From NCBI RefSeq assembly GCF_006345805.1, contig NC_043003.1, positions 78,182,001 through 78,246,000 on the forward strand: 64,000 bases of DNA, read 5' to 3'. Each line of letters starts with the position of its first letter. Positions within the stretch are counted from its first letter, which is position 1. A model generated the notes under the pieces. It saw only the letters and a list, made by a program, of their open reading frames with translations. It did not search any database and was not told the DNA's origin. The DNA is from Octopus sinensis. Lineage: Eukaryota. The translations under genes and the position numbers were made by a program. Below are positions 1,369 through 62,362 of this stretch, piece by piece.

Positions 1369-4300
1369 GTGAGTATTATTTGTTTAGTCCCTTACTACTT
1401 GAACTGGCTGTATTCAGCCAAAATATTCAACCTGTTTTATGTTCTCACAAGCCAGATCTGACCTATTACACCTAGACTACAATGTCATTCTTAAAACAAA
1501 CAACTACTTCATTGAAATATCATAGTTTCAAGATAATGTATGATAAATTCAAAACTATGTGAATAAAGAAACATTACATTTGACAAATATCTTGCCAGTG
1601 CCGGTGGACTTGCTCCTGTGCAGGTGGCACATAAAAAGCACCATTTGAGCATGACTGTCGCCTGTACAACCTAACTGGCCCTCGTACCGGTGGCACGTAA
1701 AAGCACCTACAACACTCTGAGTGGTTGGCATTAGGAAGGGCATCCAGCTGTAGAAACTCTGCCAGATCAGATTGGAGTCTGGTTCGCCAGACCTCAGTCA
1801 AATCGTCCAACCCATGCTAGCATGGAAAGCAGATGTTAAACGATGATGATTAAGGATGAAATTTTCTGAAAAATAAAATCTAAGTAAATTTCATTGCTCT
1901 CAAGAGTGGGAAAGTCTGGCATTTTGGGCTTGAGTTGTTCTCTGTGGATAGATCTATGCCTCCAAAACATTGACTTTTGTTTTGTTTTTTTATTCCTCAT
2001 CGCACCCAAATTTATTAATCTTAACATTCTCTATTAGATTTTTCATATATATTCAGTATATATTGCTTTTGATTGTCTTTTGTCACCTGTAACTCCCTTT
2101 AACACATCAAATGCAATATTAACCTCCCAATTCATCTTATTCCTGACTATATACCTGAACTTGGGCTGCGAGATGCTGTTTCATTATTCCATTAGGCTTC
2201 TAGTGTATGTATCACTCGAATGAACTAAGATTTCATTTATGGAAAATTGGAGATTATAATTTTTTTTTTTTTTTTTTTAATCGATTGCCAGGAACAAACT
2301 CTAATTTAGTATTACATGGAAAAACAATTAAGTTTTGACTCTGTTTGTAATGAGTCTCTTCATGATAATGAAGTCTAGGTTTCTGACTCACGAATACCTT
2401 GCAAGAAATATCCACTATATGCCAATAACTTTTGTTTCAAAATCTTTGTAACTTTTAGGTAGAGGATATTGTCAACAAACGACAGACTCTAAGTTTGATA
2501 GAAAAAGATATGGAAACGTGGTTAAAAGTAAGTGTGTTTAATTTTATTTGTTTTTGAATGATGTGTGTGTGTATGTATGTGTGTGTTTTATATGTATGTG
2601 TGTGTGTGTGTGTGTGTGTGTGGTATATTTTGTAGGTGGAGAAGTTTCAAGTGTAAGATTAACTTGAGCTCTTAGAACTTGCTGTGTTTGTGTTGTTGGT
2701 TAAAAAGTTCCTTTCTTATATTTGAACCTCCAATGTATTAGTTGCTGATTATAAACATTTAACTTACTTCATCTCTCTAGCTGTCTCTTACATTTCATAC
2801 AATTAATCTTCTAATTAAAGTGATGCTTTGAAAAATCATTTTGTTTCTTTAGCAATACACATGTCATGACAATAGAACACTCTTACCCCACCCCCCACTC
2901 TCTCTTTCTCACACACTCACACGACTTGTTTGAATGTTTAAAATGTCTGATATGGATCATTGCTGATAAGATTTTAATCCTTCAGACTACGTACTTCAAC
3001 TTTAGAGACGAAACAGTTCTTATTTACACCTACACTCTTTTGATTGGTTTGATCTCCATTCATCATCATGTGTAGTGCAGATGTAAATATTGTTTAAAAA
3101 AATTATTTTTCAATGTCTAAAGATAAGTTTAAAACTCCACTGTGCAGTAAATTAGTTCCAGTAATAGTTGGCATTCCATTTTGAGTGGGTGCTGTGATCT
3201 GTTACATACCGAAAAAATCTGGCTTAAATTCCAACCTAATGAGTCATAAGGCTCATGATATCCCTACATCTAGGTTTATTTATCTGTGAGGACACCTTGT
3301 CTAGTGAAGGTTAACTGCATTCATCTTTATGGCATCATACAACTGTTTTACTGAGACCATATTTTAATATGTCAATGCCAAATCCTCAGTGATGTATTTT
3401 ATTTCCTTCTACAATTTGATGATAGCTATTTTGCTATCCATCTATGTCAGATACCAGCTTTATCAGTCATCATAGATGGTTTAAGAATAAGTATTTGTCT
3501 GACTTTATAAAGCAAAAAAAAAAGGCTTTGTAAAATTTATTTCCTAGTAATTTCCTATTTTCTCTTTTTCACACTTTTAAGGAACGGAGAAAATTGGGCC
3601 AGAATATAGAAAAATACACGAAAAAGAAAGAAACTCTTACAGAAACTCAACAGGTAAGAATGTTGGAAGAGTATTTCATATGAGTTTATTTTATTTAATA
3701 TTATTTCAAACTATATCTCATTTTCAGTAATTTATATCTGACATTTGTAATTGGAAAAAGGAAAAACTGTTTTCAATTTTTTTTATTATTCTAGTCCCAA
3801 GAAGCAATTGATGAATGTGTAGATGTAATTGAGAGCTTAGAAGGACAACTTCAGCTATGCCAAGAGCACATTACTGAGATACAGGAGCAAATCATGCATC
3901 TGGAAGAAAATAAAGTAATTTTCATTGTATCTTTTAATTTTTTTTTTTTTTTTTTGGGTTTTTCAATTTTGTTTATTCACTGAGAACCCAATAGCAGTTT
4001 TTATATTTTGTAGATGCACGATACTAGTGCCCAACATGTATTTAGAACAAAACTAAATGTGTTTAGTGGCTTCAGAGATTTTACAGCAATACAACTGTTT
4101 TATTTTCTAAGCTATCTCAAATTAAATCATTTGCCAGATAGATGTGTGTATGTGTTCATGCCTGTATGCGTACGTGCGCGTGCACACACATTGTAGAGTT
4201 AAGGGAATCCTTTTTGTCTTGTCTTGAACATGGCAAACCTCTCTAGTAGTAGAATAAAATGCATCCAGTACATTCTGTAAATAATTGGTGTTAAGAAGAA

Positions 4301-7300
4301 TAGAAACCATGCCAAAGATATAATGCAGGAGTGTGGTACAGTCTTCCAACCCTTCTAGGAAAGCAGTAACTTGAAATAAAGACATAGTCCACACTGGTCC
4401 ACTCAACCTATGCAAGTGTGGAAAAAATAGATGTAAAATGAAAATGACAATTGTGTGTTAGACCATCCATTCAAATTTGAGGCTTGTATGAGCTGAATAC
4501 AAACTATTTGGCTGTGAAAAAAGTGGAATCTGTTTGGTCAGTAAGAAAAACTAGAACGAAAGTTATACAAACTAAATCACTTTTAGTAAAATTTAAACCC
4601 CTGGCAAATATGGTCGGCAATCCAGAATATTTTTCTGGTGCATTTTGACTTATATACTTAATATTCTAATTTTTCACTAGTCTACTACTCATGAATTTTT
4701 CTAATTTTCTGAGAAATTTCAAATTTCTAAAATCTATTACTCAGTACTTAGTTTTTTTTCTTTTTTCAAAGAACTCAGGAACATATGGATTAGTTTAGAT
4801 ACCTGAAAATCAGAAAAACTTGGGTGTGATATTTACTAAAGTATATAAATGTTTGTTTGAAATTATATGAAAGGAAAACTGAATACATTAACAAAAACAA
4901 GTGTTTTCTTATATTTTTAGAACAATGATGAATTGGAGAAACTACAAGTTATATACAGTAAAAGCAACCATTTGGAGAGTCAATATTTGTTTAGACATCT
5001 AATGGAATCTGTATTATCAAAGGTAATATAAGCCTTCTATAATCCTTGTTTCTTAAATGTTCTTGTAATGTGACTTTCTTGTGACTTTTACTAAAGGAAG
5101 GTAAGTGTGATTGGCCAGGATATCATCAATACAGCATAAAACTTTGTGTTGGTTAGTCATGTTAGTGGCTATGGAAGTTTAGAACTAGGAATGGTGATTG
5201 GAATGGTCCTTTTGTTGCCATATTTCTGTTAAAATACACCGCCTTTGTATTGATTAATTTTGAAAATAATGAAAACTTTAGTAAAACAACTTTGCCATTA
5301 TTAAGCTGGTATCATAAAACTCAAAGTGGTTTCAGTTGAGTTGGTATCAAAAGGATTAGAATCCTTAATTTGAAATTCAATATAGGGCGATAAAAATCTG
5401 ATCACCATTTCCTAACTAGAAAGCTAACATAATTTAGAACTTGGTCAACTCCAGGTGATGAATTCCATCTATACTGACTACTAAGTTTAAACTAAGAACA
5501 AACAATTTGTTCTCATTTTGTTCTTAGTTTAAACTTAGTAATCTGTATAGAGAGAATTCATCACTTGGTGTTGATGAAATTCTAAATTGTTTGCTTTCTG
5601 GTTAAAAAATGTTAATTGAACTTGTATCTTCCTATATTGAATTTCAAATTAAAGCATTGTTATGAAAGCAGAAAACTAGTAGCAGTCAAGATCGATCAGT
5701 TTAGCAAGATTATTTTTTTAATCAATAAATTGAACTTCAATGGCTGTATCTTTTGTGAAAATGCTGCAGATATTTTGGTAAAAAATAAACTATTTTTGTT
5801 TGACCTAAAGAAATCATTTGACAAAATTTTGCCATTTGAAAATTATGCAGAAAATGTTTCACTAAGTGTTCAGACATTTAAAGAGACTGAAAAACGTTCG
5901 TCAAGATTAAGATTGCCACCCTGGCTAATACAAAGCAAGTGGGATATTAACCTCCATTGGAACTTTAATATGTATTAGCTACTATTCATAATTACTAATT
6001 CAGGAACTTCAGAATATCATGTAAATTTAATTATTCTGATTAAACAGAAGTTTGTTTTAGCAAAGATTAATATTGTGGTTATTTTGATATGTATGTATGT
6101 ATATACATATATACGTACAAGTTAGTTTTGGTCTTATGGCAGAAGTATTCATCTTTATGACGGTGTTTCCTGCTTTTAACAAATAGACAGTATATTGTTG
6201 TTTCATATGAATCTTTACTTATTTTCTATTACTGTTTCAGGGAACATTATGTGCCAATAAAGAGACTGAATTAAAAGAACTTCAAGCTAAACTTCACCAA
6301 TGCATGGTGAATAATAACTTACAGCAAGATATATTGAAGCATATGATGGCTGATAGAATAGACATTGACATGGAAGAATTTGTACAAAATGATGCTGGTA
6401 CGTTCTTGATCTTTCTTACAATGGATTGGATTGTAGCACTGCGTAGCTGTAATTGTCTTTGATATTGTCTTCTAAAGTTCAGTATTAAGAAAGAATATAG
6501 TCACTGAACTTAAATCCTTTGGACAGTCATTCTTCTTTTTTTTTGTGTGCATTGATTTACATCTTGATCCGTGACCAGGGCTGGTTGAAGGTACCAGCAA
6601 CTTAAGCATTTGCTCAGAGTAGAATGAATTAGGTAATCTTCCTAATACAAAAAGAGAAATGTGAAAAATAATAAAATGTGAAAATGTTGCAGAAGTTAGG
6701 GGTTCATTTGGACTAGGCACAGAGACTATTCTGTCACCCACCTGTCCTCCATTCAGTTTTTGAAACAAAATGTGTTGAGATCATTGCCAAAAGTGCATCC
6801 AGTGTCCAGTCTTACTTAGTTATACAAATGAAGGTATTTGAAACTTTATTCCTGAGTTTGAATTGTTCTCTTTAACTAGGATATTGTAATAAGCACTTTA
6901 GTCCTACATTTGCATTTTAACCATGTAAATTTAAGAGTAATTAAGGGTGCTGAAATGATGTAAAGACTTGGTGTCTGTTACATTATGCACAGGTTGCAAT
7001 GGGTAAATTGTCACCATCTTATATTTTTAATTTGGGCATGCACATTTTGTTTTTGATTTTGTTGACTACACAGTATAGTAGAGTCAGTTGGGCACTGTCT
7101 GTGAGAAAAACACAGTTCACTTTGCCAGAAATTTGGATATAATATGCTGTACTGCTTGGCATTCACACCAGAAGCTCCAATATGAACATCCCAGGGTCTT
7201 TGGGTATCAATCTGAGGACATGTACCGAGAGTGATAAAAATCTAACATCCAGTTAACATCCTAGTGTTTGGAGTGATCACTAGTGATGGCAATGTTATGC

Positions 7301-10300
7301 CTCCATTCATCTTCCCACATGACCTCAAACTCAATACAGAGGCCTACATCAAGTGCTTGGAGGAGTTAGTGCTACTCTGGGTCAAGAGGGAGGCTGCTGG
7401 AAAACCCTATGTCTGGCAACAGGACTCTGTACCATGCCACACAAGCAGGAGAACCCAGTCATGGCTGTTAGACAATTTCTGTGACCGCCTAATTCTCCAG
7501 ACTGCAAACCCCCTTGATTATTATGTGTGGGGTGCAGTTGAGTGAGACGCTAACAAAATTCCTTGTAATACCAAAGATGAACTGAAGGCAAGGGTTATGG
7601 CAGCATTCACCAACTGAAACCCCTTTTGGCAATGTAATGTATCCATTATGTTGCCATTCACTAAGATAGCTGCCTTAATAGGTTTCCATGGTGTTCCTTT
7701 TCTGTGTGTGGCTTCTAATGACAACTCAATACATGGGGGATATAATACACTTCAGTCATTCATGTCTATCTTGGAAATCTCACTCTCTTTCTTCATGTTG
7801 TTTTAACATCCATCTTATTTTTCACATCTGATTCACCCTTTGTGCAGGTTAAGAAAACTCCATTTCTGTTTTGTTTACATCAAGGAAGAACCACTTTATC
7901 TATTTATCAATACTGTTAAATTCCCCTTTATTTCATAGGATGTCATTATTTCTGTCACACTGGTATGACCAGGTTGTGGATTTGCAAACAGAAGTTTTTG
8001 ACACCTCATGAAATAAAGGCGAAGTCTGTGCATTATTAAATGACTAAAATAACTCCTTCACAGTGTAATTACTTGAATTTCAATACATGATCTTAGAAGT
8101 TATTTGCTTGACAAGTACAAATCTGAAACTATTTTTTTGTATTAAAAGGGAATTCACTTTTTTTTATTTTCAGAGACTGAAAGTATTAGTTCAGGTTCCA
8201 CCTCTCCTGTCGACAAGTGAGTAACACTAACACAGTATTTCATGTTTTTCTTCCTCCTTCTTATTTATATGTAAAATCAGATAAACTGCTCTACAAATGG
8301 GGAATTATCTTGTTGGAATCATTTAGAATCAGAATATGCTGTACAATTTAAAAATTCTAATTTCTTAAATTTATGTATAAAGTAAGATGTTATAAAATTC
8401 CAAGTACATTGACTAACATTTAGTGTCATTGATTACTTATTACCCAGCTGGAGAGGGACAAGGAATAAATTTAGTTCTGAACCAGTACATTCTTTGTTCA
8501 GATGTTACTAGAGTTTACTTTGTCAACCCCTAGGCTAGGATCAGTATAATGAATCCTAGTAAGACTGGGGCCAGTTAAATCAGCTATATCCTTTCTCTTA
8601 TTAAAATTACTGTCTTTTGTACAGAAATCCATATTGTAAACATGAAGCTTTTGGAAAATATTGAAACAGAATTTATCATTGAATTCTCAAATTGGAGAAA
8701 TGTTTCAGTTGTCATTTAGAAAATATTTTGGCCCTTGGTTTGCTGGCTAACTTTATGCAAATGACATTTAGTGAAAATTCAGTGACAAGCCTGTTTGTAC
8801 TTATAGTTCTTTGTATCAGTTCTTTGACTAACATTTAAATATGCTGGCTAAAAGATTCTACTAATACAAAATGAATTCTTTGTCAACTCAGAAAATTTAA
8901 TGACTGAGACAGCTAAGTTATTCTCTTGTAATCATCAAGGATCCGTGACTGAGTACTTAACTCTAGTATTGGGCTGTTTAAGCAACTGAGACTGTCATTC
9001 CTCTTCAGACAGCATGCTGATTTACCACAGGTGAAGTGAGGCTGTGTAGAATTAAGTTCCCTGATCAGAAACACATTGGATTTAAACTTATGACTTAGAG
9101 TTAAATATCATTCAGTGATTTCACCACCATAAACACACCCCTGAAATGTACCTCAGTTATGTGTATCATAGGGATTAGAAACTTATTCTATGACAAGATG
9201 AGACTATCTTGTGCTGGGTACTCCTGAGTGTTTTAATCCTTATAGTTTAGATTCTATAAAACAAATTTTGACACATACCTTATTGTAGTCTAAACTTGAT
9301 TGGGTTTCAACTATATTACATATTTTATTAGTTTCAGATTTGTATTTATTGAATATTTATTCAATTTATTGTATTTTGTAATGTTTTCATTAAGAAATGT
9401 TAATTTAATTATTGAATACATGTGAAATTGTTAATTTCTCCAAGTCCTCATTGTTTCTTGCTTTAACTTGTAGTTTGTCCACTGTTAGAATAATTTTAGT
9501 ATCACTCTCCAAAACATACTTTCCTCCTGACTTTTGTAGTTGTATCTCATTTGTTAGTAGTTGAACAACCATAATGGTGTCATCTCTACACATTTAAACA
9601 AACCAGCCTCTGGAATGGTGCAATCTAGATGGCAATCATTTGATCATGAATTGAAGAAAATATAAATTCGTATAATTCTGTGTTGTTAAAAACTGCTTAG
9701 TTTGTCTAAAATAAAGAAACTAAGCTAACTGAAATTACAGTGTCTTTCTTGTAACTATTAACATAAGCTGACACTTAGGAAAGGAGATGGCAGAAAATTA
9801 CTTCAATCTGATATCAGCACCAAGTCAACCTCAATAACTTAGCTCTGATTCTTAGACATATCTATCCTATGATGATAAACTGCCCAAATAGATAAGTTAT
9901 TGAATTAACTGCTTATGAGTCTAGTTCTAATCTGTTGCTATTATTTCATTGTTTGGACTGCTTCCGTATTGAGAGCCAACTTTTGTAAATAGGTAGCTGT
10001 TTATCTGAGAATGTTTTATCTCAGATCAGAGTTCACCAATCATCTGGTCTCTGCATAATAGCAGGTGTGTGTAACAACTAATTCCAGAGAGAAATGCTTA
10101 GCATCATTTGTTATAACTCTGAAAAGCCCACACTATACTGAAACACACTTCTTTTCAAATAATATTATCAGTTCATAAAATGACATTTTCTTTCCATTAA
10201 CCAGAACTCTACTGTTGATCAGTCAAGCTACATGCACATAGTACCTTTTGATGTAAAATTGATTTCAACAATGGTTGCCTTTACTGGCACTATTTTAGTT

Positions 10301-13300
10301 GAAAGTCTTTTATTTATGTCTTATAAATTGTATGTGGTTAGTGTGTTGGCTAATTAAAATAGTTCTTGTTACCTGAGTCTTGTATAATTTTAACATAAAA
10401 ATAACAAATATTTCTGTATTATTGATCTCCATCTAATTCGAGTAATCAGTATAAATAATAGCAATTATATACCTATTTGTTTCAATATCCTGACTTAAAA
10501 TCTGCTTGCTCATTAAAAATTAAAAATTTCTTAAGTATGATTACTTATAGTTAAATCATAAAAATGTTACATTTATATAAATTAGTAGTTTTTTCTTTTT
10601 TTTTACCTTTCAAATTATTATAATTAATATAAGAAAGTTTTCTCATAAAATCAGATTTTGTCGGCTGATTTCATAGAGATTACTCCTTCATGGTTAGTTC
10701 TTTAATAGTCAATATTTTCTAAAAGCAGGCTGACAAAAGTCACTTTGTTTGATTTATTTACTTTTTTTTTTTTTTTCAATATAAAAAAAAAGCAGGCTAT
10801 GTTTTTTTTTTTTTTTTAAATGCTTTAAATTTATCAGATTAATATATATGTATGAGTATAAACTTATTCTTCAGCGAGAATAGTATTGACAGTGACTTTG
10901 AAACTTTGGCCAGCAAAACAATTATTTGACTGTCCAAGGATGGCTTACTTGGCCAAATCTTCAAAGCCACTGTCAGAATGATTCTTGTTAAAGAAATATG
11001 TATGTTATAGTCTTTTATTAATTCAGTATTATAGCCTTAATATGTATTTTTCATATAATCTCTTATGAACTTTAATAGGCTTGTTGGCTGTTAATCTTGT
11101 TAATAATAATAATAGCAAAGTTGGTCCCAGATTAATTTTGTATGGACTTATTGTCTTGTTTCTTTCAAATATTTTCTATTTTTTAAAATAGTATTTTTTT
11201 TTTATTAAAGCTATGTTATTAACAAATTACTTTCTTTCTCTTTTATTCTTCATTGCGGTGGCCTGTCCCATATCCACCCTTCCCTATTGTTGTGATATTG
11301 GTTTGATTTCCAGTGACTTTTGTTGCTTTGCTGCTGTTGTCTTAGTGTGCTTCATTGCATTAGAATTGCTATGGTCTTGAAAAATCACTCCTTGTGTTTA
11401 GTCTCTGTTATTATTATTATTATTATTACTACTACTACTACTACTACTATTACTGCTGCTACCACTCTCGTGACATTAATGGATTTCTCACATCACCTTC
11501 CTGTGCCTGTCAACAGAATGCTGCCTTTTTTTTCTAGTTTTCTATATGTTTGTTTTTTATTTTTCTACATAAACTGTTATTGTTGTTACCATTCCCATCA
11601 CAATAATCATAATTTGACATTTTTTTTTTTACTTTTTATTGTATATTATCATTGTTGCCTTTATGATTATTTTTCTAAACTTTCTAGCATGAATGTCAAA
11701 AAATGTACCTCCCCCGTACGTGTAAGTATGGGTTCCTCTGCAGTTCAAATATTGTGTGTTGTCACAGGTTCTCAAATAACCATGTATATACATATTACGC
11801 CCTATATATACCCCACCCCCAGTGCCCAATTAATATTATTTAATGCTTACCCCCCAAATATCGACATATTTTACAACTCCACTCCATTTTTCAATCTTTA
11901 TTTTTTTATCTAAAATGTATTTTGTTAACCTTTTAACAAACATTAACTAAATTAATATTTGGGCACATTTTGGTTTCATCAACAATCTGCCAAGAAATTA
12001 AATGGAGAGGAAGAGGAAAGACAAAACTGCTGAGTATAGAACATTGTGTGTATGTGTGTGTACATATATATATGTATTAAATATTCTTTTTCGAGCCAAA
12101 ATGATGCAAGTTGTTAGAATTAATAATACAGGTTGATGGGCAGTACTGCTACCTTGTATTTTAGTATTTTTGGTTTAAGACTCTTTCCCCAAGAAATTGA
12201 CAGAGCAGAAGAGTCAACTATGAACACCTTTCCTCCATAGATTTCTTAGAAGAAGGATTCTTAAGCCTGAAATATCAAAATACTGGATAATAGTTCTAAC
12301 CTGTAATTATTAATCGTTTCATAAGTTACATTGTTTCTGCTTAAAGAAAAAAACATTATATATATATATATATATATATGACTTACACACACATACAGAA
12401 TAAAACTTAAATGGAATCGTTCAGTAATTATGCAATATGAAGGTTCCTATACCATTTCTGTGATATAAAATGGAATTATGAATGTGATTATTTTATTTCT
12501 CGGTTGTCATTTGTAAAATGACTCTCAGAGTTCCTGGAATGTGACTGCTTACCATTTCTGCTTATCTTCAGCTTATTTCAGTTAAATCCAGAAATTTGTC
12601 ATGGATTACATCTGTTAGGGTTTTCAGTTATTTTTTTACTGAAAAATGTTCTCGACACTGCAAAATATTTGGAAATCCTTGAATTTCATGCAAGAATAGT
12701 GTAACTTGAAGCTTATGTGTAATACATACAGAGCTAACATGACATTCCAGTACCCCTTACGCTTATCTTTCCAATACCTGCATATTTGCATACCTCCCAC
12801 ATCCCTACACAAACTTTCTGACATACAAGTACATTACTCTGTGCCACTGGTGCCTCCTAATGGTCATTCATCCTGCTAGAAATAGCAATCAAATCACAAC
12901 CTGCTAAATTTAGAAATATAAAAAAAGTTAACATTGGATAGTAAAGCCTTAGAGCTGTGTGAAAAACACAAGATGGGATGATCACAGCTGGAGCACTTGT
13001 GATCAGGTCAGAATTAACCTGAGAGCTAAACAATTACCCATCACATTTCTTTCTAACATGTCTAAAGCACACATCCACCACATATTCTCCACACACATGC
13101 ATCCCTTTCACATACTCAGCTCTCCTGCTTATGTACATATATGCTTGTGTACATAAATTTCTCATGGAGACAATTGAACATACTTATGGGAAGACATGCT
13201 CTTCTTTTGGTGAGAAGTGCACTATATATATGATTAGATAAAAATAGCTATGGTCGGTGTATGGGGACTCCACACGTAATCTTATGGAAGGTCGTAGAAC

Positions 13301-15048
13301 AGCTGGGACCCTACATCAATAGGAGTAAACGTTGCAAGCTGTGCATAGCTAAACAGGTGAGAATATTAAAGGGCTTCCTCAACCCAGGGTACATCTTAAA
13401 TTCCAGGACAGAAACATTCTCACCCTGCTTACACTTGAGGAGATTCTTACTGAAGTCCTGGAACTCACAAACCAACCACGTCAACTACAGATAGTTGTCC
13501 GATTGTCAACAAGTAGCTATGAGGTCTTTTCTCCCTCCACTTTGAAGAGAGGTCATAGGCCACTGGCCATTAGGGTCTGAAGAAATGTTATAAAGCTTAG
13601 TGCTTTATGAACATGAAACCCATGGTAACCCCATACACCCGGCCATAGTTATCTGTATCTAATTACTCTACTGCTCTATATTTAGTGTGCTTTTGGATTT
13701 GTGATTTACTGATGATGTACACACATGCACAAGTGCAAGTATCATGCATACATACATTCATATGTACATGTACCATACATTTATACATACATGTTAAAGC
13801 AAAACAAAAGTTTAAATATTTCACAAAGTGTTACATATAAGCTTGTTACTGTTACTTGACTCTGCTGCTGCATTATTTTTGAGCCAAGTGAAATTTCCCT
13901 GTCCCCGTACCCTATCCATGTCTGTCTCTGCTGATCCTTGCTTGTAGTTCCTTTATTTTCATCTTGAAACTATGATGGCTCCCAATGTTTTTGGACTGTA
14001 AAAGGATTCCAAACTGCATGCCTTATTTATTTAATTTTTTTTAATTCCTTCATTTTTGTTGCATCAATGTATTGTAATCACTTAGCATCATCAATGTTGT
14101 GGACCTTTTGTTTTTGAAAAGGATACACATTCATTAAAAAAAAAGAAAGTAATAAACAAAATCACTGCATGTGTATTTTTCGTATTTTTGTTGTTGCTCC
14201 TCCTACTACCTCTACTACTACTACTCCTCGCTGTTACTTCTCCGCTCCTCTGTGCCTGCCCTGTAAATCCACATGGACTAACCAGCATGTTCGACAGACA
14301 GAGAACAAACCAACTCAGTCCCAATATGGCCACTGGAGAGTCCTTAAAGAAAGCAAAGGTCAGTATTGGTCTGGTCTTGCTCATTTTGGGATGTTCTTTT
14401 TCTTTTCTTTTTAAAAAAATTTATTTTGTATCTTCTAGATCTGAAAACATTTTGCATGTATATAGTGTCTTATATCTTGTTTTGGCCTTCATGTAATTAC
14501 TTTCTGTGTGTGGAAGATGTTTTACAAATTGGACTTCTCGTTTACTAATATTATTGGTAGATAAGGCAATAATCAGTATTATTAGTCGGTATATTTAGAC
14601 CTACCTTTTCTTTTATTCTTGACAACATATATACACAGACAGACGTGTGTGTGTGTGTGTATGTATATATATATATATATAATTTAGCAGAAGCAACAGT
14701 GTTTCAGGGGCTGAGAGTTTTGTGTGTTGTCTAATCAAACTTGTGTTTGTGTCACCATACCTATGTGTGTTTGTGTGAAGTCATGAATTACCCCCACCCC
14801 CCGCCACATAACTTTCTATTTTACAAGTAAGGCATCTGTTCTACATGGCTTTGAAGGTGTGAAATAAATGGATGATTTGTTGATGAGAACTGATGACAAC
14901 AGCACTGCCCACCACAACTTTCATATGAGCAATCACAGATGTATACACACCCACCCACCCACTCATGTATGCACACACACATATATATATATATATGTAT
15001 GTAAACGTGATATATGCATATCTGAGTATGTATACAATGGATGATAGT

Positions 15049-15087
<39 letters not shown>

Positions 15088-15531
15088 AACCTTAAAGCCT
15101 TGTGAATGGATTTGGCAATCGGAAACTGGAAGAACCCCATTGTATGTATATGTATCCATTTGTGTCTCTAATATAATAGTTGGAAGTAACCATTACTGTT
15201 GTTCATTTCCAGTCTTCTGGTCATGGGGAAATATCTTGTTTGGAAATAGCTGAGAGCTAGCAACTAGAAGTGCATCTGATGGTAGAAAATCTGCCTCAAT
15301 GGATTCTGGCTGATTCAAACAGACATTAGGGCATCCAGCTATAGAAACCATGTCAAAACAGACAGTAGAGCCTGGTGCTGTTCTCTGACTTACCAGCTCC
15401 TGTCAAACCATTGGACCCATGCCAGCATTGCAAACAGACTCCGATGATTTTTATATATAAATATATATAAATATAAATATATATAATATAAATATATATA
15501 AATATAAATATATATAAATATAAATATATAA

Positions 15532-15594
<63 letters not shown>

Positions 15595-18500
15595 ATATAT
15601 GGTCATCCCATAAATAATGCAATTTTTTTTAATACTTTTATTTGTCAATGTTAAATATACACTTCTTCATTTTCTACAATCTACAGTGCTCTGGTAGACT
15701 TGCAAGGCCCCTCTTCCAAAATTTACTTATCTGTGATGAAAAATACTCCTCCAGGACTGTTCTGACCTCTTCTACAGAATTCATATTTTTTCTGTCCAAA
15801 TGATTTTGAAGACTGTGGAATAGATGATAATCAGATAGGGTAATGTTTGGCAAATATAGTTGATGGGGCATTGTTTCCCATTCAAACTGCTCCAGCCTTT
15901 GAAATGTCATCCTTGCTGTATGCGGTCAAGCATTATCCTGATGGAAGAACACCTTTCATCTTGAAACCAAAGATGGTCATTTTTCTTCTTGTGCTGACTT
16001 ACGCTGCTTGCAGTAGATCTCCTTTGTTATCATTTGGGTTTAAAAGTTCAAAGTGGACTAAACCTTTCATATCCCAACAAACAGATAACACTTTATGTAG
16101 GTGAAGACCTTCTTTAGCCTGGGGTGCCAGTGTTTCTCCTTTCTCTACCACTGTCTTCAACACTTGACATTTTTATAGAGAATCCATTTCTTGTCACTGT
16201 TCAGTCCAAAAAAGGTTCATTTGTGAGACATGACAGCAAAGAAGAGCACACATTCACTCTTTGCATGCAGCTGGACTCAGAAAGTTTGTGAGGAACCCAT
16301 TGACCCAATGTGCTGACTTTTCCAATGACACACTGGTGTTGATGAATGGCTAAATGACCAATTCCAAGCTTCTCTGCTAGTTCCTCAACAGTTATGGTGA
16401 TATTTTGTTCCACCAGGATTGCGGACATCATCATCAAGCTCTCCAGGTTTTCCAGTCTTCTAGACTATTGTTTCTGGCTCGGAATTTCTGGAACCACTGT
16501 TGACACTGGTTTATGCTTATTGTCTGATAGCCATATACTACTTTAATATTCCTTGCACTTTTCATAACGTTGTTGCCTTTATTGAACCCATATAGCAAAA
16601 TATGCCAAATATACTCGTTCATCACTTCCATTATAGCTTTGAAAAAATAACTGTTAAAATCAAACTGTACTCTTCAAAACGTTCACCAAGAATAAGCACA
16701 AGGTAAAATTACTATCTGCTTCTATAGCAAGTTGATGCATGTAGTTTATCCCAACCCCTTCGACTTTATTTCACACAATTTGAGGAAAAAATGCATTATT
16801 TATGGCATGACCCTATATATATATGTAAACACTCCCTGTTTTATCTTTTGACTGTGCATTCATGGATATGCTCAGCTTGTAGGGAGTACTTGAGATACTG
16901 AATGTTTGCTTTGAAGTCCATTTTTATCATTTGTAAGCTCTCTACATTAATTGAATCCACCTACATAGCCAAGTGATCTATGCTTGTGATGGACTTGATT
17001 CTTGTTCTATAGTCCACATGACACCACTCTATGCTACATACAGCTATCATATTATGCTCCACCTCATTGCATACACACACAGTTGTAACCAAACATGATG
17101 GTCGATGAATGATACCTTAGTCCTTTCACTGTTTTGTAGAATTTTTTTTTTATTTTTAAATTTCTGAAATCTTAGTCTGCTAAATTTCAAATATTTATTT
17201 CTCAAGATTGTATGTTTTATTGGATTACATGACTTATCTTTTCCTTCTTTCTTTCCATTTTTCTTTTTTTTTTTTTTCTTTTCTTCTGTTAAGTACTATA
17301 GGAACTTAATTCAGTTACTTTTCTTTGCAGCTTTGACACAAGAAATTCCATTTGAGATTTTATCTGGTTTTCATGTATTTTACTGATTTTCATTTTTTTT
17401 TTTTTTTTTCCTTTAATTATTTAAGTGACAGGACTTAAACATCTGTCAATATAATACACTGAGACAGTGAACCAGCAGAATCATTAGCATGCCAAGGCAA
17501 AATGTTTAGCATTTCGTCCATCTTTACTTTCCGCCATTGTCAACTTTGTTTTTCATCCTTTCAGGGTCACTAAAATAAGTACCTGTTGAGGACTAGGGTC
17601 AATGTAATTGACTAGCTCCTCCCCTGAACTTGCTGGTTTTGTGCCAAAATTTGAAACCAATATGCTACATTATCTAGAGAAATTATTTGGTATTATCATT
17701 ATATAGTATTTATTGATGTAAAGTCCCCCACCGCCAAATTTTATATCATTTTATGTATTACAGAAAATAACATTCTTCAAAGAATTCTTACTTTGATATA
17801 CTTCTGTCCAGTTTCTTAAATCTTTTCAAAGATGTCTACTGGCACTCCAGCTGTTATGACATCAAGGGTTCCAGTTGATCCAATCAACAGAACAGCCTGG
17901 TCGTGAAATTAATGTGCAAGTGGCTAAGCACTCCACAAACGTGTGCCCTTAACATAGTTTTTAGGGAGATTCAGTGACATGGAATGTGATAAGGCTGGCC
18001 TTTTGATATACAGGTACTACTCATTTTTGCTAGTTGAGTGGACTGGAGCAATGTGAAATAAAGTGTCTTGCTGAAGAACACGTGTCACCGGAAATTGAAT
18101 TCATGACCTTGCGATTGTGAATTGAATACCTTAACCACTAAGCCATACTCCTTCACTTCTCAAAGATGACTGATGCATTTATTTTCAATAATTATAAATG
18201 AACTTGCATCTGTAAATATGTGTATGACTTATTTCAACATGGCTTTCTAGTAGTTACATGCATATAGAATAAAATTGATCAAAAGATAATTCCTTTACAA
18301 ACCAAAATAATTACTGAGTTGGTACTTAACTCTGGTCTTTAAAATAGCATTATGATGAGATTAGATAGATGACTTTACTGATTCTGCAGTTAGGTGAACT
18401 GAGGTCATATACTCATTAATAATCTTTCCTAGAAACAGTTGGAACACCAGCACAGGTGTGATTTTATGGCCTATGAGCTAGAAATCAATTGCACAAGATA

Positions 18501-34200: not shown

Positions 34201-37200
34201 CGGTAAAGCTGTCATACTTGATGTAGTGAATCAACAAATTTTAATTAAATATGGAATGCTGTAGGAAATTACTACTAACAGGATTATTCTGTCATTACAA
34301 TTAGTTCCATCACCTAGCTAAAGCGAAGTTTGGTCAAAAAGCTTTTTATAGATTTGTTATTCATTTCATTCCTGTTGGCATGTACTTAATCTGATTTTCC
34401 TATCTTGTGACCATTTTATTTTTTTAATGCTTAAGCTATGTGTTTTCAGTAATAGCTGTATTTATTTCCACATGTCTAGATCGTACTGCCAAAGTCTGGG
34501 ATCTCAACACTGGCCATGAGCTACAAGTCTTTCCTGACCATCCTAACAATGTAGTGGCACTAAAGTACGATGAACCATCCCATAGGCTCTACACAGTCTC
34601 ACTTTCAGAAGTGAAAGTCTGGGATATTCGAGATGTCTCAAAACCTAACTGTGTTATAGCCTTTAAGTAAGTTGCGTGTGATTTGTTTTGCTTTCTTTAA
34701 TTCCTTGTGGTTTAATATGTGTAACCAAATCTGTATTCAGTTTGCTGTATTTATGCTTGGGCAATGCAATAAAACTTGTATTTCATCTGAAACTCTGTGT
34801 GTGTGTGTACACACATACACCTATACATACATACATATAATCTAAATAATTAGACAAAGAAACACTACTCTTTGCTACACCTATACAATGGTTTCACCAT
34901 CATGAAACCAGGATTTTCTACACCTGAAGAATTTTGCTATTAGTCTGGAATTTGACAGTGTTGATAATTGAGAACTTGGGTTGAGTACTTTTGTGGAAGT
35001 ATTCTACCTTTATACCCTACCAGGATCATATATATATATATATATATATTAATGAATATGAATCAAGGATTAAATTTATTTCCATTTATTTTATGACTTG
35101 GTTTGCAGAAGGGTAGCAGCTATAATGTTTTGTGGGAGTAGAGGGCTCCTATGACTGGAGGACAAGAGAGAAAAAGTATCTAATAATTATAAGCAGTTTC
35201 TATAGTTATTCAGTAAAATAAAAGCAGTTAGAAATATTGCTTCTATATGTTAGAGGATTATTTGAAATGTATGTTCATTTTGTAAACGCCAAATTTACAA
35301 TTACTTTAATTTTATCAAAGGTGTTATTAGCAATGTAAGTTTCTATTTTAAATGTTTGTATTTCTCATTTTCAGTTCCTCAGGTTTTGCATCTGCACCAA
35401 TATCATATCAAACACGCCAGAGTGAAGTCAGTCGTCATGAAAATTTAATAAATGCCATTTCACTGAGTGATGATGGCCAGACACTGTTTACAGCTGTTGG
35501 AAACCTAGTTCGCATGTGGGATCTTCGAAAGTAAGTTGGTTAATGCCTTACCTTAAATATATACCTAATTAATGCTCTTCATGCAATTGGAATGTCTGTT
35601 ATAGCTTATTGTGTTAACATGAATCATGATTATTTAAAATATTTGCTTAAAATAAATAGCAATCTTGCGCATATGTCAAGATTGCTAAGTCAAAGATGGA
35701 GTGCCATCTTTTGTTTGGCTTAGAAGCAAAGCATAAAATCAAGAGATCTTTAATAAGGACACTACAGCTATCGGGGAAAGTGGCTATACTTGATACATGG
35801 ATATGAAGGTAGGAATGCCATATGATTTACCCAGTGTAAACTGGGTCCACAAGAGTGGATTATAGGCAAACTGACGAAAGATGGATTTTATAGTTAGCCA
35901 TAAAATCACCCCTAAAATAAATTCATTCAAATACTCAGTGTTCCCTAAAAGTAGTTGGTAGCTTTTGTTACCTAAGTTACCTATTTAGCAGCGTAGGTGT
36001 GTTCTGAAAAAGGTAGTAGCCAGAGAAAGATCAGAATGAAAAAGTTCAGGGAGCTATCTCATCTGCCAGCACTGAAAGAGATTCTCTCTTTGAGTAAAGG
36101 GTAAATTTTATGATGCGTCTGTATAAAGTGTGATGTTGCATGGTAGCAAAACATGGGCATTGAGGATGTGAAAAGGGTGGGAGAAATTAAGACGAACATG
36201 TATGTGTAATGTTAGTACATGTGGTCGATAGAAATAAAAACTGGGTATGAGAGGAATCAGATGTAGAGTGCAAAAGAAAAGACTGAGCAAGTATTGGCAT
36301 GTGGTACACATAGAGGATAACAGTTGGATACAAAAGTGCCAAGAGATATTGGTGCAAGGAGCCTAGTAGATCTCACAGGACTGATCGTGCTGAAGGAAAT
36401 GACAAAGTAGAGTGATAGATGGTGAGGTACTCTTTTGGCACTCACTCATCCAATCCTTGCAAACTTGGAAAAAGAGACATAAAATGAAGCTAATAGTACT
36501 GGATTTTTGTTGTACTTAATGTGTATCTCATGTGAGATATTTTATTTTTAAGACAGATTTATTTTTAATGTAGCAGTGTTTCATGTATCCTCACAAAAGG
36601 TTGTTTTTCATTCATTTTAAAGCTTTAGCTGCATTAACAAGCTGACCGGTCATCAAGCTCAGGTGATGGTTCTTGCCTCAACAAGTAATGCTGAGAGTCA
36701 ACTTGTGGTCAGTGGTTCAAAAGACCACTACATCAAGGTAAATTATTTTGCATCTAAATTATTTAGCAATTCATTTTCTAGATACATTTATCTCATTCTT
36801 TCTCTTTTGTACTTTAAAAAATTGCTTATTGAAATATTAACAAAAGATGTTTATTTTTATAAAATATTGTAATATTTTTAATTATCTTTTTTTTTATAAT
36901 TACAGATATTTGAAGTGAACTCCATGACTTCAAATGTTGCCAGTCCAACATACAATCTTGAACCACCACATTTTGATGGTGTCCAGTCATTAGTGATACA
37001 AGATCAAATACTGTTTAGTGGGTCAAGAGACCGTTGCATTAAGAAATGGAACCTTAAAGACAAAAGGACCATCCAGGTATATTATATAATATATACATAT
37101 CTGTGTAATGTCTTCTGTTTTGATGACAATTTCTAGTGGATTTGGCAGAAATGTTGCAGTACTGCAGTATTTAATTATATAATTCAGAGATTTGAGTTTA

Positions 37201-41618: not shown

Positions 41619-44600
41619 TGGAAACAACTCTAGAAGAAATGAAATTTTTGGAATATCAATGAGACCATTTCTGTATGTATGTGTGTGTGTCTGGCTTGTA
41701 AAATTAGAGTACTAATATGAAACCAATAGAAAACTATTTCCAATTATAAACTCAGTCGTAAGTTACAAAGAATTTCTCAACTAATATATTATAGTGTTGA
41801 CATGCTGAGTAATAACAATCATTTTGACTAAAAAAAAACAACAAAAAATGTTTTCATTGTATTTTTGTATTGAGTACATTTTCTCTTTGCCAGCTAAAAT
41901 TCATGAATATTCTCATAAGCACACATACACATTCTCTCTTAACACTTTGTACACATCTTGATTTTAATAGCTGTATAAAACTCATACATGGATTTTAGAA
42001 ATATCAAAAAGAATTTTTAAAAAACTATAAATTAGATGATACAAATGTGTGTGTTGTAATTGTTTGATCAGCAATACCTGTTTACAAATTATTGCTTAGA
42101 ATTTAAGGGGGGAAAAATTGTCTATTTTGCTATAAATACATTGCTCTCAAAACTAATTTTAACAAGCTATGTGACCTGAAATATGATACAGCTGATAGTT
42201 GTCACTCCATATTAGTACATCATCTTTTATCTTTATTAAACCTGTAAAGCTCCTCTGTCGCATTCTGACCCAGTTAACAACTAAATGAAAGTCCTATTTT
42301 TCTTCACAAATTTGAATGTATTCTGCACTACTAACTAAGAAGGTTACCAATATTTGACAGGAATTGTATTGTTATGTACCTGGATGTGTGAATGTGTTTC
42401 TGTAGCATTTTGATTTTTGTTTTATTTCCAGTATAACCCATATCTCGGCCAGTATACACTGATTCCTCTAACTCACCACTGCATTTTATTAACTTAAATT
42501 CTGGGATTGTCTCCCCCTGCCTTTCTTGATTTTAAAGTGATAACTTCTTTTTACATAACATTCTTTGACTCATTACACGAAGTGTGTGGGAATCCACTTT
42601 ACTATATTACTAGAATAGAAAGAACAATAGTGTTCTAATTTCTAATCAGCTAGGGGTACCTTGGAAGCATAGGTGTAATAAAAAAAAATAATAAATACAT
42701 TTTAAAAAATGGCCAAGTTGCTAAGTTTTCAAGAAGCTGTTAGCTTAGCTGGCAGCATAGGGATTCTCACTTAGATCAAAGGGTAGAGTGTATCATAATT
42801 GTGTACATGCTACTATATAGCATGTGAGTAGACTTAATCTATTGCTTGGTTTAACACCACTACCTGGTACCTTTGATGCCTTTAGTGGTTTCTGGATACC
42901 TTTCTGTCTCTTTCCTACCTTGTATTGAAGGCCCTGAAACAATTCACGAGCTTTGCCTTCCATCCTGTCTAGAAGATAAAATCAAAAGAATGATGTATGG
43001 ATACTAAATACAGATGAAGTAAAAACACTGGAAAGAAATAACCCAACACTGGATGTGTAAAGTTAGCATGCATATGTGATGCAGATTTAGAGAAGCCGAA
43101 AGAAAAACTGGTTATAAAAATGGGGTTTACAAAAGAGAAAACAGCTTTGGTTTGAGTATGTAATGGTTAGGGATGATGGTAGTTGGCTGAAGAAATGGCA
43201 GGAGGTCCATGTGGACAGAAGTTGTGGAAAGCTAATTTGAGGATATTGAACCTGACAAAGGAGCACACCAAATGTTGTGTTAAAGGGAGCTGCCCAACCC
43301 ATGCAAGCATGAAAAAAGCAGACATACAAATGATGTTGTATATTGTGAGTGTGTGTAGAATATATAGCAAACGTTGACTAGAGCTATACTGCTCATGCTT
43401 CATAATTAAATAACTTGCTAAAAAGCAATATTTAGAAAGTAATAAAAGAAAAAAAATTTATTTTGTAATATTTGACTGAAAAATACATGGATTTTCACCT
43501 GGGTTTGAGTTTTCAGAGTAGACATTCTCAACTAATCAGTGACGCAAACTGAAGGTAAAAAAAGAGGCAGGCACTTAATTTTCTGGTGATTGGATTGAGA
43601 GGAAGTATGATAGGGGTTCAGACTCAGGAAAATGAATAATTGAAGTAGAGGACTCGTGATTGTGTGAAACAGAATATTTAAAGTTTACTTACATATTTCC
43701 TACATTATCACTCAAAGATCTTTTGTTTTCTTTTTTAGTAAATCATTCTGTGACAATCTACATTACTAGCAGTAGCCATGGGAATTCCATGATTATTTTG
43801 AAAACCACAAGATCGAAGTTTATAAAAAAAAAGAAACAGAATCGTATTTTCCTAAAATGATTGTATTGGGTTATTGCATAAATAATGCAGTTTTTTCAGT
43901 TGCATGAACTAAAAGTCAGAGGGGAACAGGATAAACTACCTGCATCAACTTCTTATAAAAGGAGGTAGTGATTTTACCTTGTGCTTATTCTTAGTGCAAG
44001 TTTTGAAGAGTGCAGTTCGATTTTAAGTTATAATGGATGTGACAAAAGAGCATACATGGTATTATGAGTTTAATAAAGGCAACAACACAATAGAAAATGC
44101 GAGGGATATTAATGCAGTATATGAGGATCAGACAATAAGCGTAAACCAGTGTCGACAGTGGGTCTAGAAATTTTGAGCCAGAAACTACAGCCTAGAAGAT
44201 GAGCCTCATCCTGGAAAATTCTTAGAGCTCAATAAGGACGTCTTGCAAACCCTGGTGAAACAAAACCCCATTGCAGCTGTTGAACTAGCAGAGAAGCTTA
44301 GGTTTGGTCAGTCAACCATTCATCAACACCTGTGCTAGAAGCAAAAAACGACCATCTTTGGTTTCAAGACGAAAGGTGCTCTTCCATCAGGATAATGCTT
44401 GGCTACATACAGCAAGGATGACATTCCAAAGGCTGGAGCAGCTTGAATGGGAAACTATACCCCACCCACCATATTTGCCAGACATTGCCTCATCTGATTA
44501 TCATTTATCCCGCAGTCTTCAAAATCATTTGGACGGAAAAAATATGAATTCTGTGGACAAGGTCAGAACAGTACTGGAGCAGTATTTTTTGTTATGGACA

Positions 44601-62056: not shown

Positions 62057-62169
62057 TTTTTACATAAAAAGATGATTTAAAAACGAAATAATTTAATCTG
62101 CATATTAATGTAACATCTTATTTTTATATATAGAAAGTAGCTGTACTGTAACAAGCTTTATCAACTCAC

Positions 62170-62362
62170 CTTAATGATCTACTTAGTTTTTCATAATTCA
62201 TGTTGTTGTTGTTTTTAGTGAGACCCCAAAGTTTTGCAAACTTTTCTGGATCAATAAATTGGAATGTACCAGATTTTTCATTCTCCCATCGAAGGATTTT
62301 GGGATTAAACAATGAATGTTTAAGGGCTGCGTAAATGAAGGCATACAGTGGCAACAATGACA
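62170..62362 (-). CDS. ETS-domain transcription factor exon (ESE/ELF-like, divergent), main part of the ETS domain
   Basis: Translates LYAFIYAALKHSLFNPKILRWENEKSGTFQFIDPEKFAKLWGLTKNNNNMNYEKLSRSL; tttttag| acceptor, AG|gtgagt donor within the Arg codon of LSRSLR. Confidence 0.92.

What the first reader, a model, noticed from the sequence alone, without database searches (positions are those of the whole stretch)
13564..13645. Sense-strand hammerhead ribozyme inside a kinesin intron, 640 nt upstream of a regulated exon
Seen in sequence: a complete type I hammerhead topology. Stem I is TGGCC/GGCCA plus GGGT/ACCC; then CUGAAGA, an extra A, a 12-bp stem II with one bulge and a UUAGU loop, GAAA, a minimal 3-bp stem III (ACC-cau-GGU, containing the palindrome CCAUGG), and a GUA cleavage triplet with predicted scission between 13627 and 13628. 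It directly follows a Penelope GIY-YIG remnant on the same strand. Established: Penelope-like elements carry minimal type I hammerheads whose short palindromic stem III often needs dimerisation, and an extra A after A9 is tolerated in the CChMVd hammerhead. Inference: because it is co-oriented with KIF21, it is transcribed in every pre-mRNA. It could cut the intron before exon 14286 is joined, biasing choice in the alternative exon cluster or yielding truncated, WD40-less transcripts. The core is intact although the adjacent ORF has decayed.
Basis: partly seen in the sequence, partly recalled or inferred. Interest (0 to 1): 0.78.

Follow-up and report, generated by a model that had tools for sequence, protein, structure and literature searches.

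The report
Transposon-derived hammerhead relic in kinesin intron
The hammerhead ribozyme motif is really there, but it is the standard tail of a broken, 5'-truncated Penelope-like retrotransposon (Hydra clade) that landed in a KIF21 intron, and nothing found here suggests it regulates the kinesin gene.

Summary
In detail: window 13564-13645 (+) has every element of a type I hammerhead at the stated coordinates, with predicted scission at 13627/13628. A relaxed descriptor finds it once in the window, against 0.02 hits per shuffled 64 kb.

It sits 83 nt after the stop codon of a GIY-YIG endonuclease remnant on the same strand. That remnant belongs to the Hydra clade of Penelope-like elements (PLEs), which are published as always carrying hammerheads. 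The copy is sharply 5'-truncated at 13264.

Three homologous octopus copies, and two Hydra-clade copies from other taxa, carry a hammerhead in the same place. Compensatory changes are seen in helix II and in the palindromic helix III.

The host gene is KIF21-like and co-oriented, so the motif is transcribed within an intron.

The regulatory reading is unsupported:
- there is no second copy in 64 kb for the dimer these ribozymes need;
- the window copy carries a substitution (U13623) that breaks the family's in-register helix III palindrome;
- G10.1-C11.1 is absent;
- the catalytic fold is predicted to be disfavoured;
- no Rfam model matches;
- published PLE mini-hammerheads show no detectable cleavage as monomers.

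Verdict: an ordinary transposon relic of a known kind, of low interest.

The parts
13264..13494 (+). C-terminal ~77 codons of a Hydra-clade PLE GIY-YIG endonuclease. The frame is open from 13234, with an ATG at 13261 and the stop at 13492-94. It has the CxxC (CKLC) ... LN ... CxH (CLH) motifs. The element is 5'-truncated here.
   Evidence: HMMER search: 236 hits at E<=1e-3, all to C-termini of CxCX5C/GIY-YIG proteins. The motifs match the Hydra clade definition. Alignments to L001, L002 and L003 all begin at 13264.
13495..13563 (+). 3' untranslated spacer between the endonuclease stop codon and the hammerhead.
   Evidence: Homologous to the spacer in L002 and L003 (63-78% identity).
13564..13645 (+). 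Type I hammerhead motif including the closing outer stem. The core and inner helices span 13573-13631.
   Evidence: Homologues at L002 4199-4292, L002 2806-2903(-) and L003 2119-2214. Pair counts.
13627..13628 (+). Predicted self-cleavage site (after A17 of the GUA triplet).
   Evidence: Follows from hammerhead numbering applied to the sequence. Not tested experimentally.
13623..13623 (+). U where the relatives have G (L002, both copies) or A (L003, paired with a compensating change on the other side). This breaks the family's in-register helix III palindrome (consensus ACCCAGGGU).
13646..13700 (+). Tail of the element's terminal repeat (pLTR), followed from about 13716 by CA/TA-rich microsatellite-like DNA.
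   Evidence: Aligns to L003 at 77% through 13700 and beyond. L002 ends earlier, directly in (TA)n.
3795..3980 (+). Open frame holding a KIF21 coiled-coil exon (host gene, upstream).
   Evidence: Pfam PF23203 KIF21A-like domain, E=1.9e-6, 28.1 bits against a 28.5 cutoff.
14286..14360 (+). Putative 75-nt cassette exon: pyrimidine tract plus AG at the 5' side, AAAG|GTCAGT at the 3' side. Not verified by any homologue or transcript.
   Evidence: Sequence only. A protein search returned no KIF21 covering it.
34428..34667 (+). Open frame holding a KIF21 WD40 exon (host gene, downstream).
   Evidence: Together with 36900-37133, best PDB match is the KIF21A WD40 domain 7klj, E=8.3e-34.
36900..37133 (+). 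Open frame holding a second KIF21 WD40 exon.

Best explanation
Window 13264 to about 13700 is the 3' end of a 5'-truncated, dead copy of a Hydra-clade Penelope-like retrotransposon. It inserted in sense orientation into an intron of a KIF21-like kinesin gene. The hammerhead at 13573-13631 is the element's own ribozyme. In active elements, which are arranged as partial tandems, two copies are thought to pair through a palindromic helix III and cut the element's RNA out of longer transcripts. Here it is a solitary copy that is transcribed passively within the intron. It is expected to cleave very slowly or not at all, and to be removed with the intron without affecting KIF21.

Shown here: the motif, its homology, its transposon context and the host gene. 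Inferred: low activity and no host function.
For: - The motif is complete and non-random.
- The upstream frame is the C-terminus of a PLE endonuclease with Hydra-clade signatures: CxxC and CxH around the E/N positions. Its homologues have the CxCX5C linker, no CC between GIY and YIG, and one (P0123) has an RT YxDD region upstream.
- Craig et al. 2021 report hammerheads in all Hydra-clade elements, presence in Mollusca, and insertion into (TA)n.
- The O. bimaculoides copy L002 has the homologous hammerhead downstream of its endonuclease, ending in (TA)n. It also has an inverted dead copy upstream, the typical PLE arrangement.
- L003 has a third homologue.
- Hydra-clade copies from other taxa (L008, L009) have hammerheads 124-141 nt after the stop codon, followed by (TA)n.
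- On four octopus copies, 79% of structure cells pair, against 33-45% when partners are slid. Nine pairs change on both sides, against 1-4 when slid.
- Helix III keeps an in-register palindrome through a double change: CCCAGGG in L002 versus CCUAAGG in L003.
- The 5' truncation is sharp at 13264.
- Against activity here: there is no partner copy, U13623 breaks the palindrome, the catalytic fold is disfavoured, and published PLE mini-hammerheads are inactive as monomers.
Against: - No cleavage assay or RNA-end data exist, so residual activity cannot be excluded.
- Secondary-structure energies ignore the tertiary core and often under-rate real hammerheads.
- The monomeric helix III (3 bp plus a triloop) is longer than in many PLE mini-hammerheads, so monomer activity is conceivable.
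- Sense orientation, 660 nt upstream of a putative small exon, is the geometry a regulatory ribozyme would need.
- Conservation at the orthologous locus could not be tested.
- Only four family copies were available, so the covariation statistics are weak, and the structure was derived from one of them.
Confidence: 0.8

Rival explanations
1. The relic retains weak self-cleavage and cuts a small fraction of KIF21 intron RNA. This happens after splicing commitment or on the excised lariat, with no consequence for the mRNA.
For: The core is fully intact, helix II is stable (pair probabilities 0.3-1.0) and monomeric helix III has 3 bp. Low activity was detected for dimeric and trimeric PLE hammerhead constructs and for single motifs with an engineered dimer-like helix III.
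Against: Monomeric PLE mini-hammerheads gave no detectable cleavage. G10.1-C11.1 is absent, and an alternative fold competes.
Confidence: 0.12
2. One reading: an active, exapted intronic ribozyme severs KIF21 pre-mRNA before exon 14286 is joined. This would bias alternative exon choice or produce WD40-less transcripts.
For: Sense orientation inside a KIF21-like intron and an intact core. There is precedent: the intronic CPEB3 ribozyme modulates maturation of its host mRNA (PMC10919898).
Against: - Only fast ribozymes disturb splicing (Fong 2009).
- At the cited mammalian polymerase rate of about 3.5-4.1 knt/min, the 3' splice site 660 nt away is made in roughly 10 s (my inference).
- This class is slow or inactive as a monomer, and there is no partner copy.
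- The palindrome is broken by U13623.
- The hammerhead is no better conserved than its flanks: 61-69% versus 63-78%.
- The exon itself is unverified.
Confidence: 0.04
3. A chance match to the hammerhead consensus with no ribozyme ancestry.
For: No Rfam hammerhead model matches, even at E<=10. The relaxed descriptor would give on the order of a thousand chance hits across a multi-gigabase genome (extrapolated).
Against: Zero of 400 shuffled windows gave a hit as good. Homologous motifs lie at the same position relative to the endonuclease in other copies, with compensatory changes. The location is the one expected for PLE hammerheads.
Confidence: 0.02

Closest known systems
Mini-hammerheads of metazoan Penelope-like elements (Cervera & de la Pena 2014, PMC4209133)
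   Same: - Type I topology.
- Location in the terminal repeat downstream of the RT-EN ORF.
- Short helix I (4 bp) and long helix II.
- An unpaired nucleotide between A9 and helix II.
- A family-level palindromic helix III implying dimeric action.
- Mostly found as solitary motifs from truncated elements.
   Different: - Helix II is longer (12 bp versus 6-8).
- 10.1-11.1 is A-U here (U-A or U.U in relatives) instead of the highly conserved G-C.
- Helix III has 3 bp plus a triloop rather than being minimal or absent.
- This copy has lost part of the palindrome.
Hydra clade of C-terminal EN+ Penelope-like elements (Craig et al. 2021, PMC8557442)
   Same: - The endonuclease has CxxC and CxH on either side of the E/N residues and no CCHH.
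- Homologues have the CxCX5C linker.
- The hammerhead lies near the 3' end.
- Ends adjoin (TA)n or microsatellites.
- The clade is reported in Mollusca.
   Different: The window copy keeps only the last ~77 codons and has A in place of the catalytic E. RT, linker and GIY-YIG core are missing through 5' truncation. I could not see the paper's supplementary hammerhead list to compare motifs directly.
Functional intronic self-cleaving ribozymes (CPEB3 HDV-like ribozyme; amniote intronic hammerheads HH9/HH10)
   Same: Sense-strand ribozyme motif inside an intron of a protein-coding gene.
   Different: Those are single-copy, deeply conserved at orthologous loci and cleave efficiently as monomers. 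The CPEB3 half-life is about 2-3 min, matched to a 9.9-kb distance to the next exon. This one is a recognisable transposon fragment, with untested conservation, a predicted poor fold, and only 660 nt to the next putative exon.
Animal non-LTR retrozymes (tandem hammerhead repeats derived from PLE terminal repeats)
   Same: Same ribozyme lineage. Many copies are intronic: 42-44% in Xenopus, though depleted relative to intergenic DNA.
   Different: Retrozymes are tandem repeats without coding sequence. This is a single unit still attached to an endonuclease remnant, and no repeat was found.

Membership tests
Hammerhead ribozyme, type I | Conserved core: C3 U4 G5 A6 N7 G8 A9, G12 A13 A14, A15.1-U16.1, H17 not G | tested here: met
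   CUGAAGA 13577-83, GAA 13615-17, A13618-U13626, A13627.
Hammerhead ribozyme, type I | Three helices around the core, with the open end in helix I | tested here: met
   Complementarity is present for helices I, II and III. Only helix II and the outer stem are predicted to form by energy: inner helix I probability 0.004, helix III 0.06.
Hammerhead ribozyme, type I | G10.1-C11.1 pair at the base of helix II | tested here: not met
   A-U in the window, U/A in L002, U.U in L008 and L009. This looks like a clade trait rather than a lesion of this copy.
Hammerhead ribozyme, type I | Match to the Rfam hammerhead covariance models | tested here: not met
   No hit at the gathering score or at E<=10 on 301 nt. 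The relatives get no hit either.
Hammerhead ribozyme, type I | Self-cleavage at the H17 site | not testable with these tools
   Needs in vitro transcription or RNA-end mapping.
PLE mini-hammerhead (Cervera & de la Pena 2014) | Lies in the terminal repeat, downstream of and co-oriented with the RT-EN ORF | tested here: met
   It starts 83 nt after the endonuclease stop codon on the same strand. The layout is the same in L002, L003, L008 and L009.
PLE mini-hammerhead (Cervera & de la Pena 2014) | Long helix II, short helix I, and an unpaired nucleotide between position 9 and helix II | tested here: met
   12-bp helix II, 4-bp inner helix I, extra A13584.
PLE mini-hammerhead (Cervera & de la Pena 2014) | Palindromic 15.2-16.2 and loop 3, allowing a dimeric helix III | tested here: inconclusive
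   The family consensus ACCCAGGGU pairs 8 of 9 positions in register, and L003 keeps this through a double change. The window copy ACCCAUGGU pairs only 6 of 9. Its CCAUGG palindrome is out of register.
PLE mini-hammerhead (Cervera & de la Pena 2014) | A second copy in tandem or nearby to form the active dimer | tested here: not met
   No other copy in 64 kb by BLAST, descriptor or family covariance model.
PLE mini-hammerhead (Cervera & de la Pena 2014) | Family of copies showing compensatory changes | tested here: met
   Nine pairs change on both sides, against 1-4 in slid controls, with 79% of cells paired. Only four sequences were available, so support is weak.
Hydra-clade Penelope-like element (Craig et al. 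2021) | C-terminal GIY-YIG endonuclease without CCHH, with CxxC and CxH flanking the conserved E and N | tested here: met
   CKLC ... ILN ... CLH in frame 13234-13491. The homologues show the full pattern. The E position is A in the window.
Hydra-clade Penelope-like element (Craig et al. 2021) | CxCX5C linker and PLE-type reverse transcriptase upstream | tested here: not met
   Absent from the window because the copy is truncated at 13264. Both are present in homologues P0005, P0139 and P0123. The window therefore holds a fragment, not an element.
Hydra-clade Penelope-like element (Craig et al. 2021) | Insertion into (TA)n or microsatellite DNA | tested here: inconclusive
   L002, L008 and L009 end in (TA)n. 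The window copy is followed by CA/TA-rich low-complexity DNA from about 13716, with no clean target site.
Host-exapted intronic ribozyme (CPEB3-like, HH9/HH10-like) | Conserved at the orthologous locus across species | not testable with these tools
   Look-ups of three window ORFs found no contig. No cephalopod KIF21 protein was retrievable.

The most novel reading that the evidence does not exclude
The solitary transposon hammerhead has been co-opted. It retains enough monomeric activity, perhaps helped by host factors, to sever a fraction of nascent KIF21 transcripts upstream of the small exon at 14286. That would tune exon inclusion or yield tail-less kinesin in octopus neurons, making it a hammerhead analogue of the CPEB3 ribozyme in an invertebrate.
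Probability: 0.03. Interest if true: 0.7.

Novelty: new member of a known kind. Interest (0 to 1): 0.15.

Why it matters
As found, it matters little. Thousands of such solitary PLE hammerheads exist per animal genome, and many lie in introns.

It is a tidy example of a Hydra-clade PLE 3' end in a cephalopod. It also gives a small hint about the biology of the active elements: across the few copies seen, the in-register helix III palindrome is maintained by compensatory change, while G10.1-C11.1 is not used in this clade.

Only if cleavage and orthologous conservation were shown would it become an invertebrate case of ribozyme-controlled splicing.

Tried and rejected
- **Rfam.** Scans of the whole window, of 301 nt at E<=10, and of the relatives gave no hammerhead hit. 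I did not treat this as refutation, because homologous copies and the transposon context support hammerhead ancestry.
- **Endonuclease remnant.** Pfam and the word-indexed protein search found nothing. The full HMMER search was needed.
- **More family copies.**
  - The profile search returned only 9 proteins.
  - L001, L004, L005 and L006 lack the hammerhead region.
  - L007 has no motif within its 300 nt of downstream sequence.
  - A metagenome pattern scan found nothing.
- **Orthologous locus.** Three window ORFs (13261-13494, 14091-14384, 14821-15159) are not on record.
- **Exon 14286.** A search with concatenated exon peptides returned only distant WD40 proteins.
- **Coiled-coil exons against the PDB.** No hit.
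- **Family covariance model R1.** It finds only its four training sequences, and does not reach the shorter hammerheads of L008 and L009.
- **Rejected: an intact core implies selection.** With about 30-35% pairwise divergence, I estimate roughly a 1-in-8 chance that about 11 core bases survive unchanged. One of the three other copies also kept the core, which is compatible with neutral decay.
- **Rejected: the CCAUGG palindrome supports dimerisation.** It is out of register and results from a substitution that damages the family palindrome.

Full report
**1. The observation**

- outer stem UGGCC 13564-68 with GGCCA 13641-45;
- inner helix I GGGU 13573-76 with ACCC 13628-31;
- CUGAAGA at 13577-83, then an extra A at 13584;
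- a 12-bp helix II (13585-13614) with bulged G13609 and loop UUAGU;
- GAA at 13615-17;
- helix III ACC/GGU around CAU;
- A17 at 13627, which places the predicted scission at 13627/13628.

I wrote a relaxed type I descriptor with these requirements:
- CUGANGA, then 0-1 extra nucleotide;
- at least 4 bp in helix II;
- GAAA, then 0-12 nt in helix III;
- UH at the cleavage site;
- at least 4 bp in helix I.

It hits this site and nothing else on either strand of the 64-kb window. Dinucleotide-preserving shuffles give 0.0225 hits per window, and 0 of 400 give a hit as good.

Rfam does not recognise the motif. There was no hit at the gathering score for the whole window, nor at E<=10 in a 301-nt search.

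**2. What lies around it**

The + frame 13234-13491 ends at a stop codon 83 nt before the CUGAAGA box. Pfam and the word-indexed protein search found nothing for it. A full HMMER search of 1.8 billion representatives found 236 proteins at E<=1e-3, all matching through their C-termini.

Their sequences share one architecture:
- a CxCX5C motif;
- a GIY...YIG core with no cysteines between the two halves;
- a CxxC...E...N...CxH tail.

One hit (P0123) continues upstream into a reverse-transcriptase YxDD region. Pfam gives weak GIY-YIG matches for two of the hits.

These are the features by which Craig et al. 2021 define the Hydra clade of Penelope-like elements. That paper describes:
- short elements under 3 kb;
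- a C-terminal endonuclease without CCHH;
- the CxCX5C linker;
- CxxC and CxH on either side of E and N;
- insertion into (TA)n;
- presence in Mollusca;
- canonical hammerheads 'readily detected' and 'universally present'.

The window has CKLC ... ILN ... CLH. The 'Penelope GIY-YIG remnant' is therefore real and can be placed more precisely.

Alignments of three relatives to the window all begin at 13264. The copy was 5'-truncated there, as is usual for such retroelements. Only the last ~77 codons, the 3' spacer, the hammerhead and a tail to about 13700 remain.

**3. Related copies**

| Locus | Source | Hammerhead region | State |
|---|---|---|---|
| L002, downstream | Octopus bimaculoides chromosome CM046605.1 | 4199-4292 (+), 235 nt after the endonuclease stop | core intact; ends directly in (TA)n |
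| L002, upstream | same locus | 2806-2903 (-), inverted | dead: C3 to G, and G at position 17 |
| L003 | Logan contig | 2119-2214 (+) | first core box decayed |

The L002 arrangement, with an inverted truncated copy upstream, is typical of PLEs. The L003 copy shares the tail beyond the hammerhead with the window.

On the four-sequence alignment A3, 79% of structure cells form pairs. When the 3' partners are slid by 1-3 columns, this falls to 33-45%. Nine pairs show changes on both sides, against 1-4 in the slid controls. With four sequences, and a structure drawn from one of them, this support is only suggestive.

A covariance model built from these copies finds only its four training sequences (the window copy plus three) in the window and the fetched loci.

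Two more distant Hydra-clade copies also carry hammerheads. L009 has one at 3632-3674 and L008 at 3650-3697. They lie 124 and 141 nt after the endonuclease stop and are followed by (TA)n.

**4. Two details that change the reading**

*The base of helix II.* G10.1-C11.1 is described as highly conserved in PLE mini-hammerheads. It is absent in every Hydra-clade copy I saw:
- A-U in the window;
- U/A in L002;
- U.U in L008 and L009.

This looks like a clade trait rather than damage to this copy.

*Helix III.* The octopus consensus ACCCAGGGU is an in-register palindrome pairing 8 of 9 positions. L003 keeps this through a double change (ACCUAAGGU). The helix III segments of L008 and L009 also pair with themselves in register, on inspection of the sequences printed. 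This is what the dimer model of PLE hammerheads predicts.

The window copy reads ACCCAUGGU. The U at 13623 cuts the in-register duplex to 6 of 9 pairs, with a 3x3 internal loop. It is one position out of register, so it cannot form together with A15.1-U16.1.

**5. Host gene**

Open frames at 34428-34667 and 36900-37133 (+) match the KIF21A WD40 domain (PDB 7klj, E=8.3e-34) with KIF21-specific stretches. The frame at 3795-3980 (+) hits Pfam's KIF21A-like domain (E=1.9e-6).

The hammerhead therefore lies in sense orientation within an intron of a KIF21-like gene.

The segment 14286-14360 has a strong pyrimidine tract, an AG acceptor, a GTCAGT donor and a length of 75 nt. It is a plausible cassette exon, but I could not verify it: the protein search returned no cephalopod KIF21.

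**6. How it most likely works**

In active elements the hammerhead is thought to process element RNA out of tandem or read-through transcripts as a dimer. Here it is a solitary relic. The evidence against meaningful activity on KIF21 pre-mRNA is as follows.
- There is no second copy within 64 kb.
- The palindrome needed for the dimer is damaged.
- The catalytic secondary structure is 3.7 kcal/mol less stable than an alternative fold. In that alternative, GGGU pairs with a second ACCC at 13637-40 and AUGG pairs with CCAU.
- Pair probability is 0.004 for inner helix I and 0.06 for helix III, alone or with 100-200 nt of context.
- Metazoan PLE mini-hammerheads showed no detectable monomer cleavage. 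Multimeric constructs, and single motifs with an engineered dimer-like helix III, cleaved only weakly and mostly at non-physiological Mg2+.
- Work with engineered intronic ribozymes showed that only fast ones abort splicing (Fong et al. 2009, as summarised in PMC10919898).
- With the putative 3' splice site only 660 nt downstream, the polymerase would reach it in roughly 10 s at the mammalian rates quoted there. This last point is my inference.

An intact core is not evidence of selection:
- the hammerhead is no more conserved than its flanks (61-69% versus 63-78%);
- the ORF is truncated rather than decayed;
- one of the three other copies also kept its core.

**7. Comparison with known systems, and novelty**

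This is a member of a known kind: the hammerhead of a Penelope-like element, Hydra clade. Solitary copies from truncated elements are the rule. In Xenopus, 42-44% of related retrozyme copies are intronic.

It differs from the published mini-hammerhead consensus in three ways: a longer helix II, no G10.1-C11.1, and a 3-bp helix III.

It resembles functional intronic ribozymes (CPEB3, HH9/HH10) only in position.

I could not test orthologous conservation or cleavage.

**8. Verdict**

The transposon origin is confirmed and refined. The regulatory interpretation is not supported.

Interest is low. About 3% probability remains for a genuine exaptation, which would be interesting if shown.

Noticed in passing
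window 62169-62471 (-): An exon encoding an Ets DNA-binding domain on the minus strand (Pfam PF00178, E=2.5e-18). It belongs to a neighbouring ETS-family transcription factor gene, convergent with the KIF21-like gene.
   Followed up: partly
window 7246-7542 (+), 15677-15925 (-), 16002-16673 (-), 44027-44702 (+): Open frames that look like Tc1/mariner transposase remnants, for example '...[20 protein letters not shown]....SDYHL..SLQNHL'. Two copies are close paralogues. Pfam gave no hit, so the naming rests on motif recall only.
   Followed up: partly
window 58682-59209 (-): Two adjacent open frames (70 and 105 aa) separated by one stop codon. They resemble the C-terminal region of a retroelement ORF. 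There was no Pfam hit.
   Followed up: no
L002 2806-2903 (-) and 4199-4292 (+): In O. bimaculoides, one Hydra-clade PLE copy is flanked by an inverted dead hammerhead upstream and an intact-core hammerhead downstream that ends in (TA)n. This is the inverted or partial-tandem arrangement described for PLEs.
   Followed up: partly
L009 3632-3674; L008 3650-3697: Hydra-clade hammerheads from other taxa read CUGAUGA-U-[CG...CG]-U-GAAA, with a U.U opposition where G10.1-C11.1 is expected and with in-register palindromic helix III. Lack of G10.1-C11.1 may be a trait of the clade.
   Followed up: partly
window 13637-13640 and 13622-13634: A second ACCC and an AUGG/CCAU pairing give a competing fold that is 3.7 kcal/mol more stable than the hammerhead fold. 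The relatives have AACC at the corresponding place.
   Followed up: partly
window 11320-11913 (+) and 13716-13800: Long low-complexity and microsatellite tracts (TAC/ATT-type coding for poly-Y, poly-I and poly-T; CA/TA-rich DNA) flank the element. This is consistent with PLE insertion bias toward microsatellites, but no clean target-site duplication was seen.
   Followed up: no
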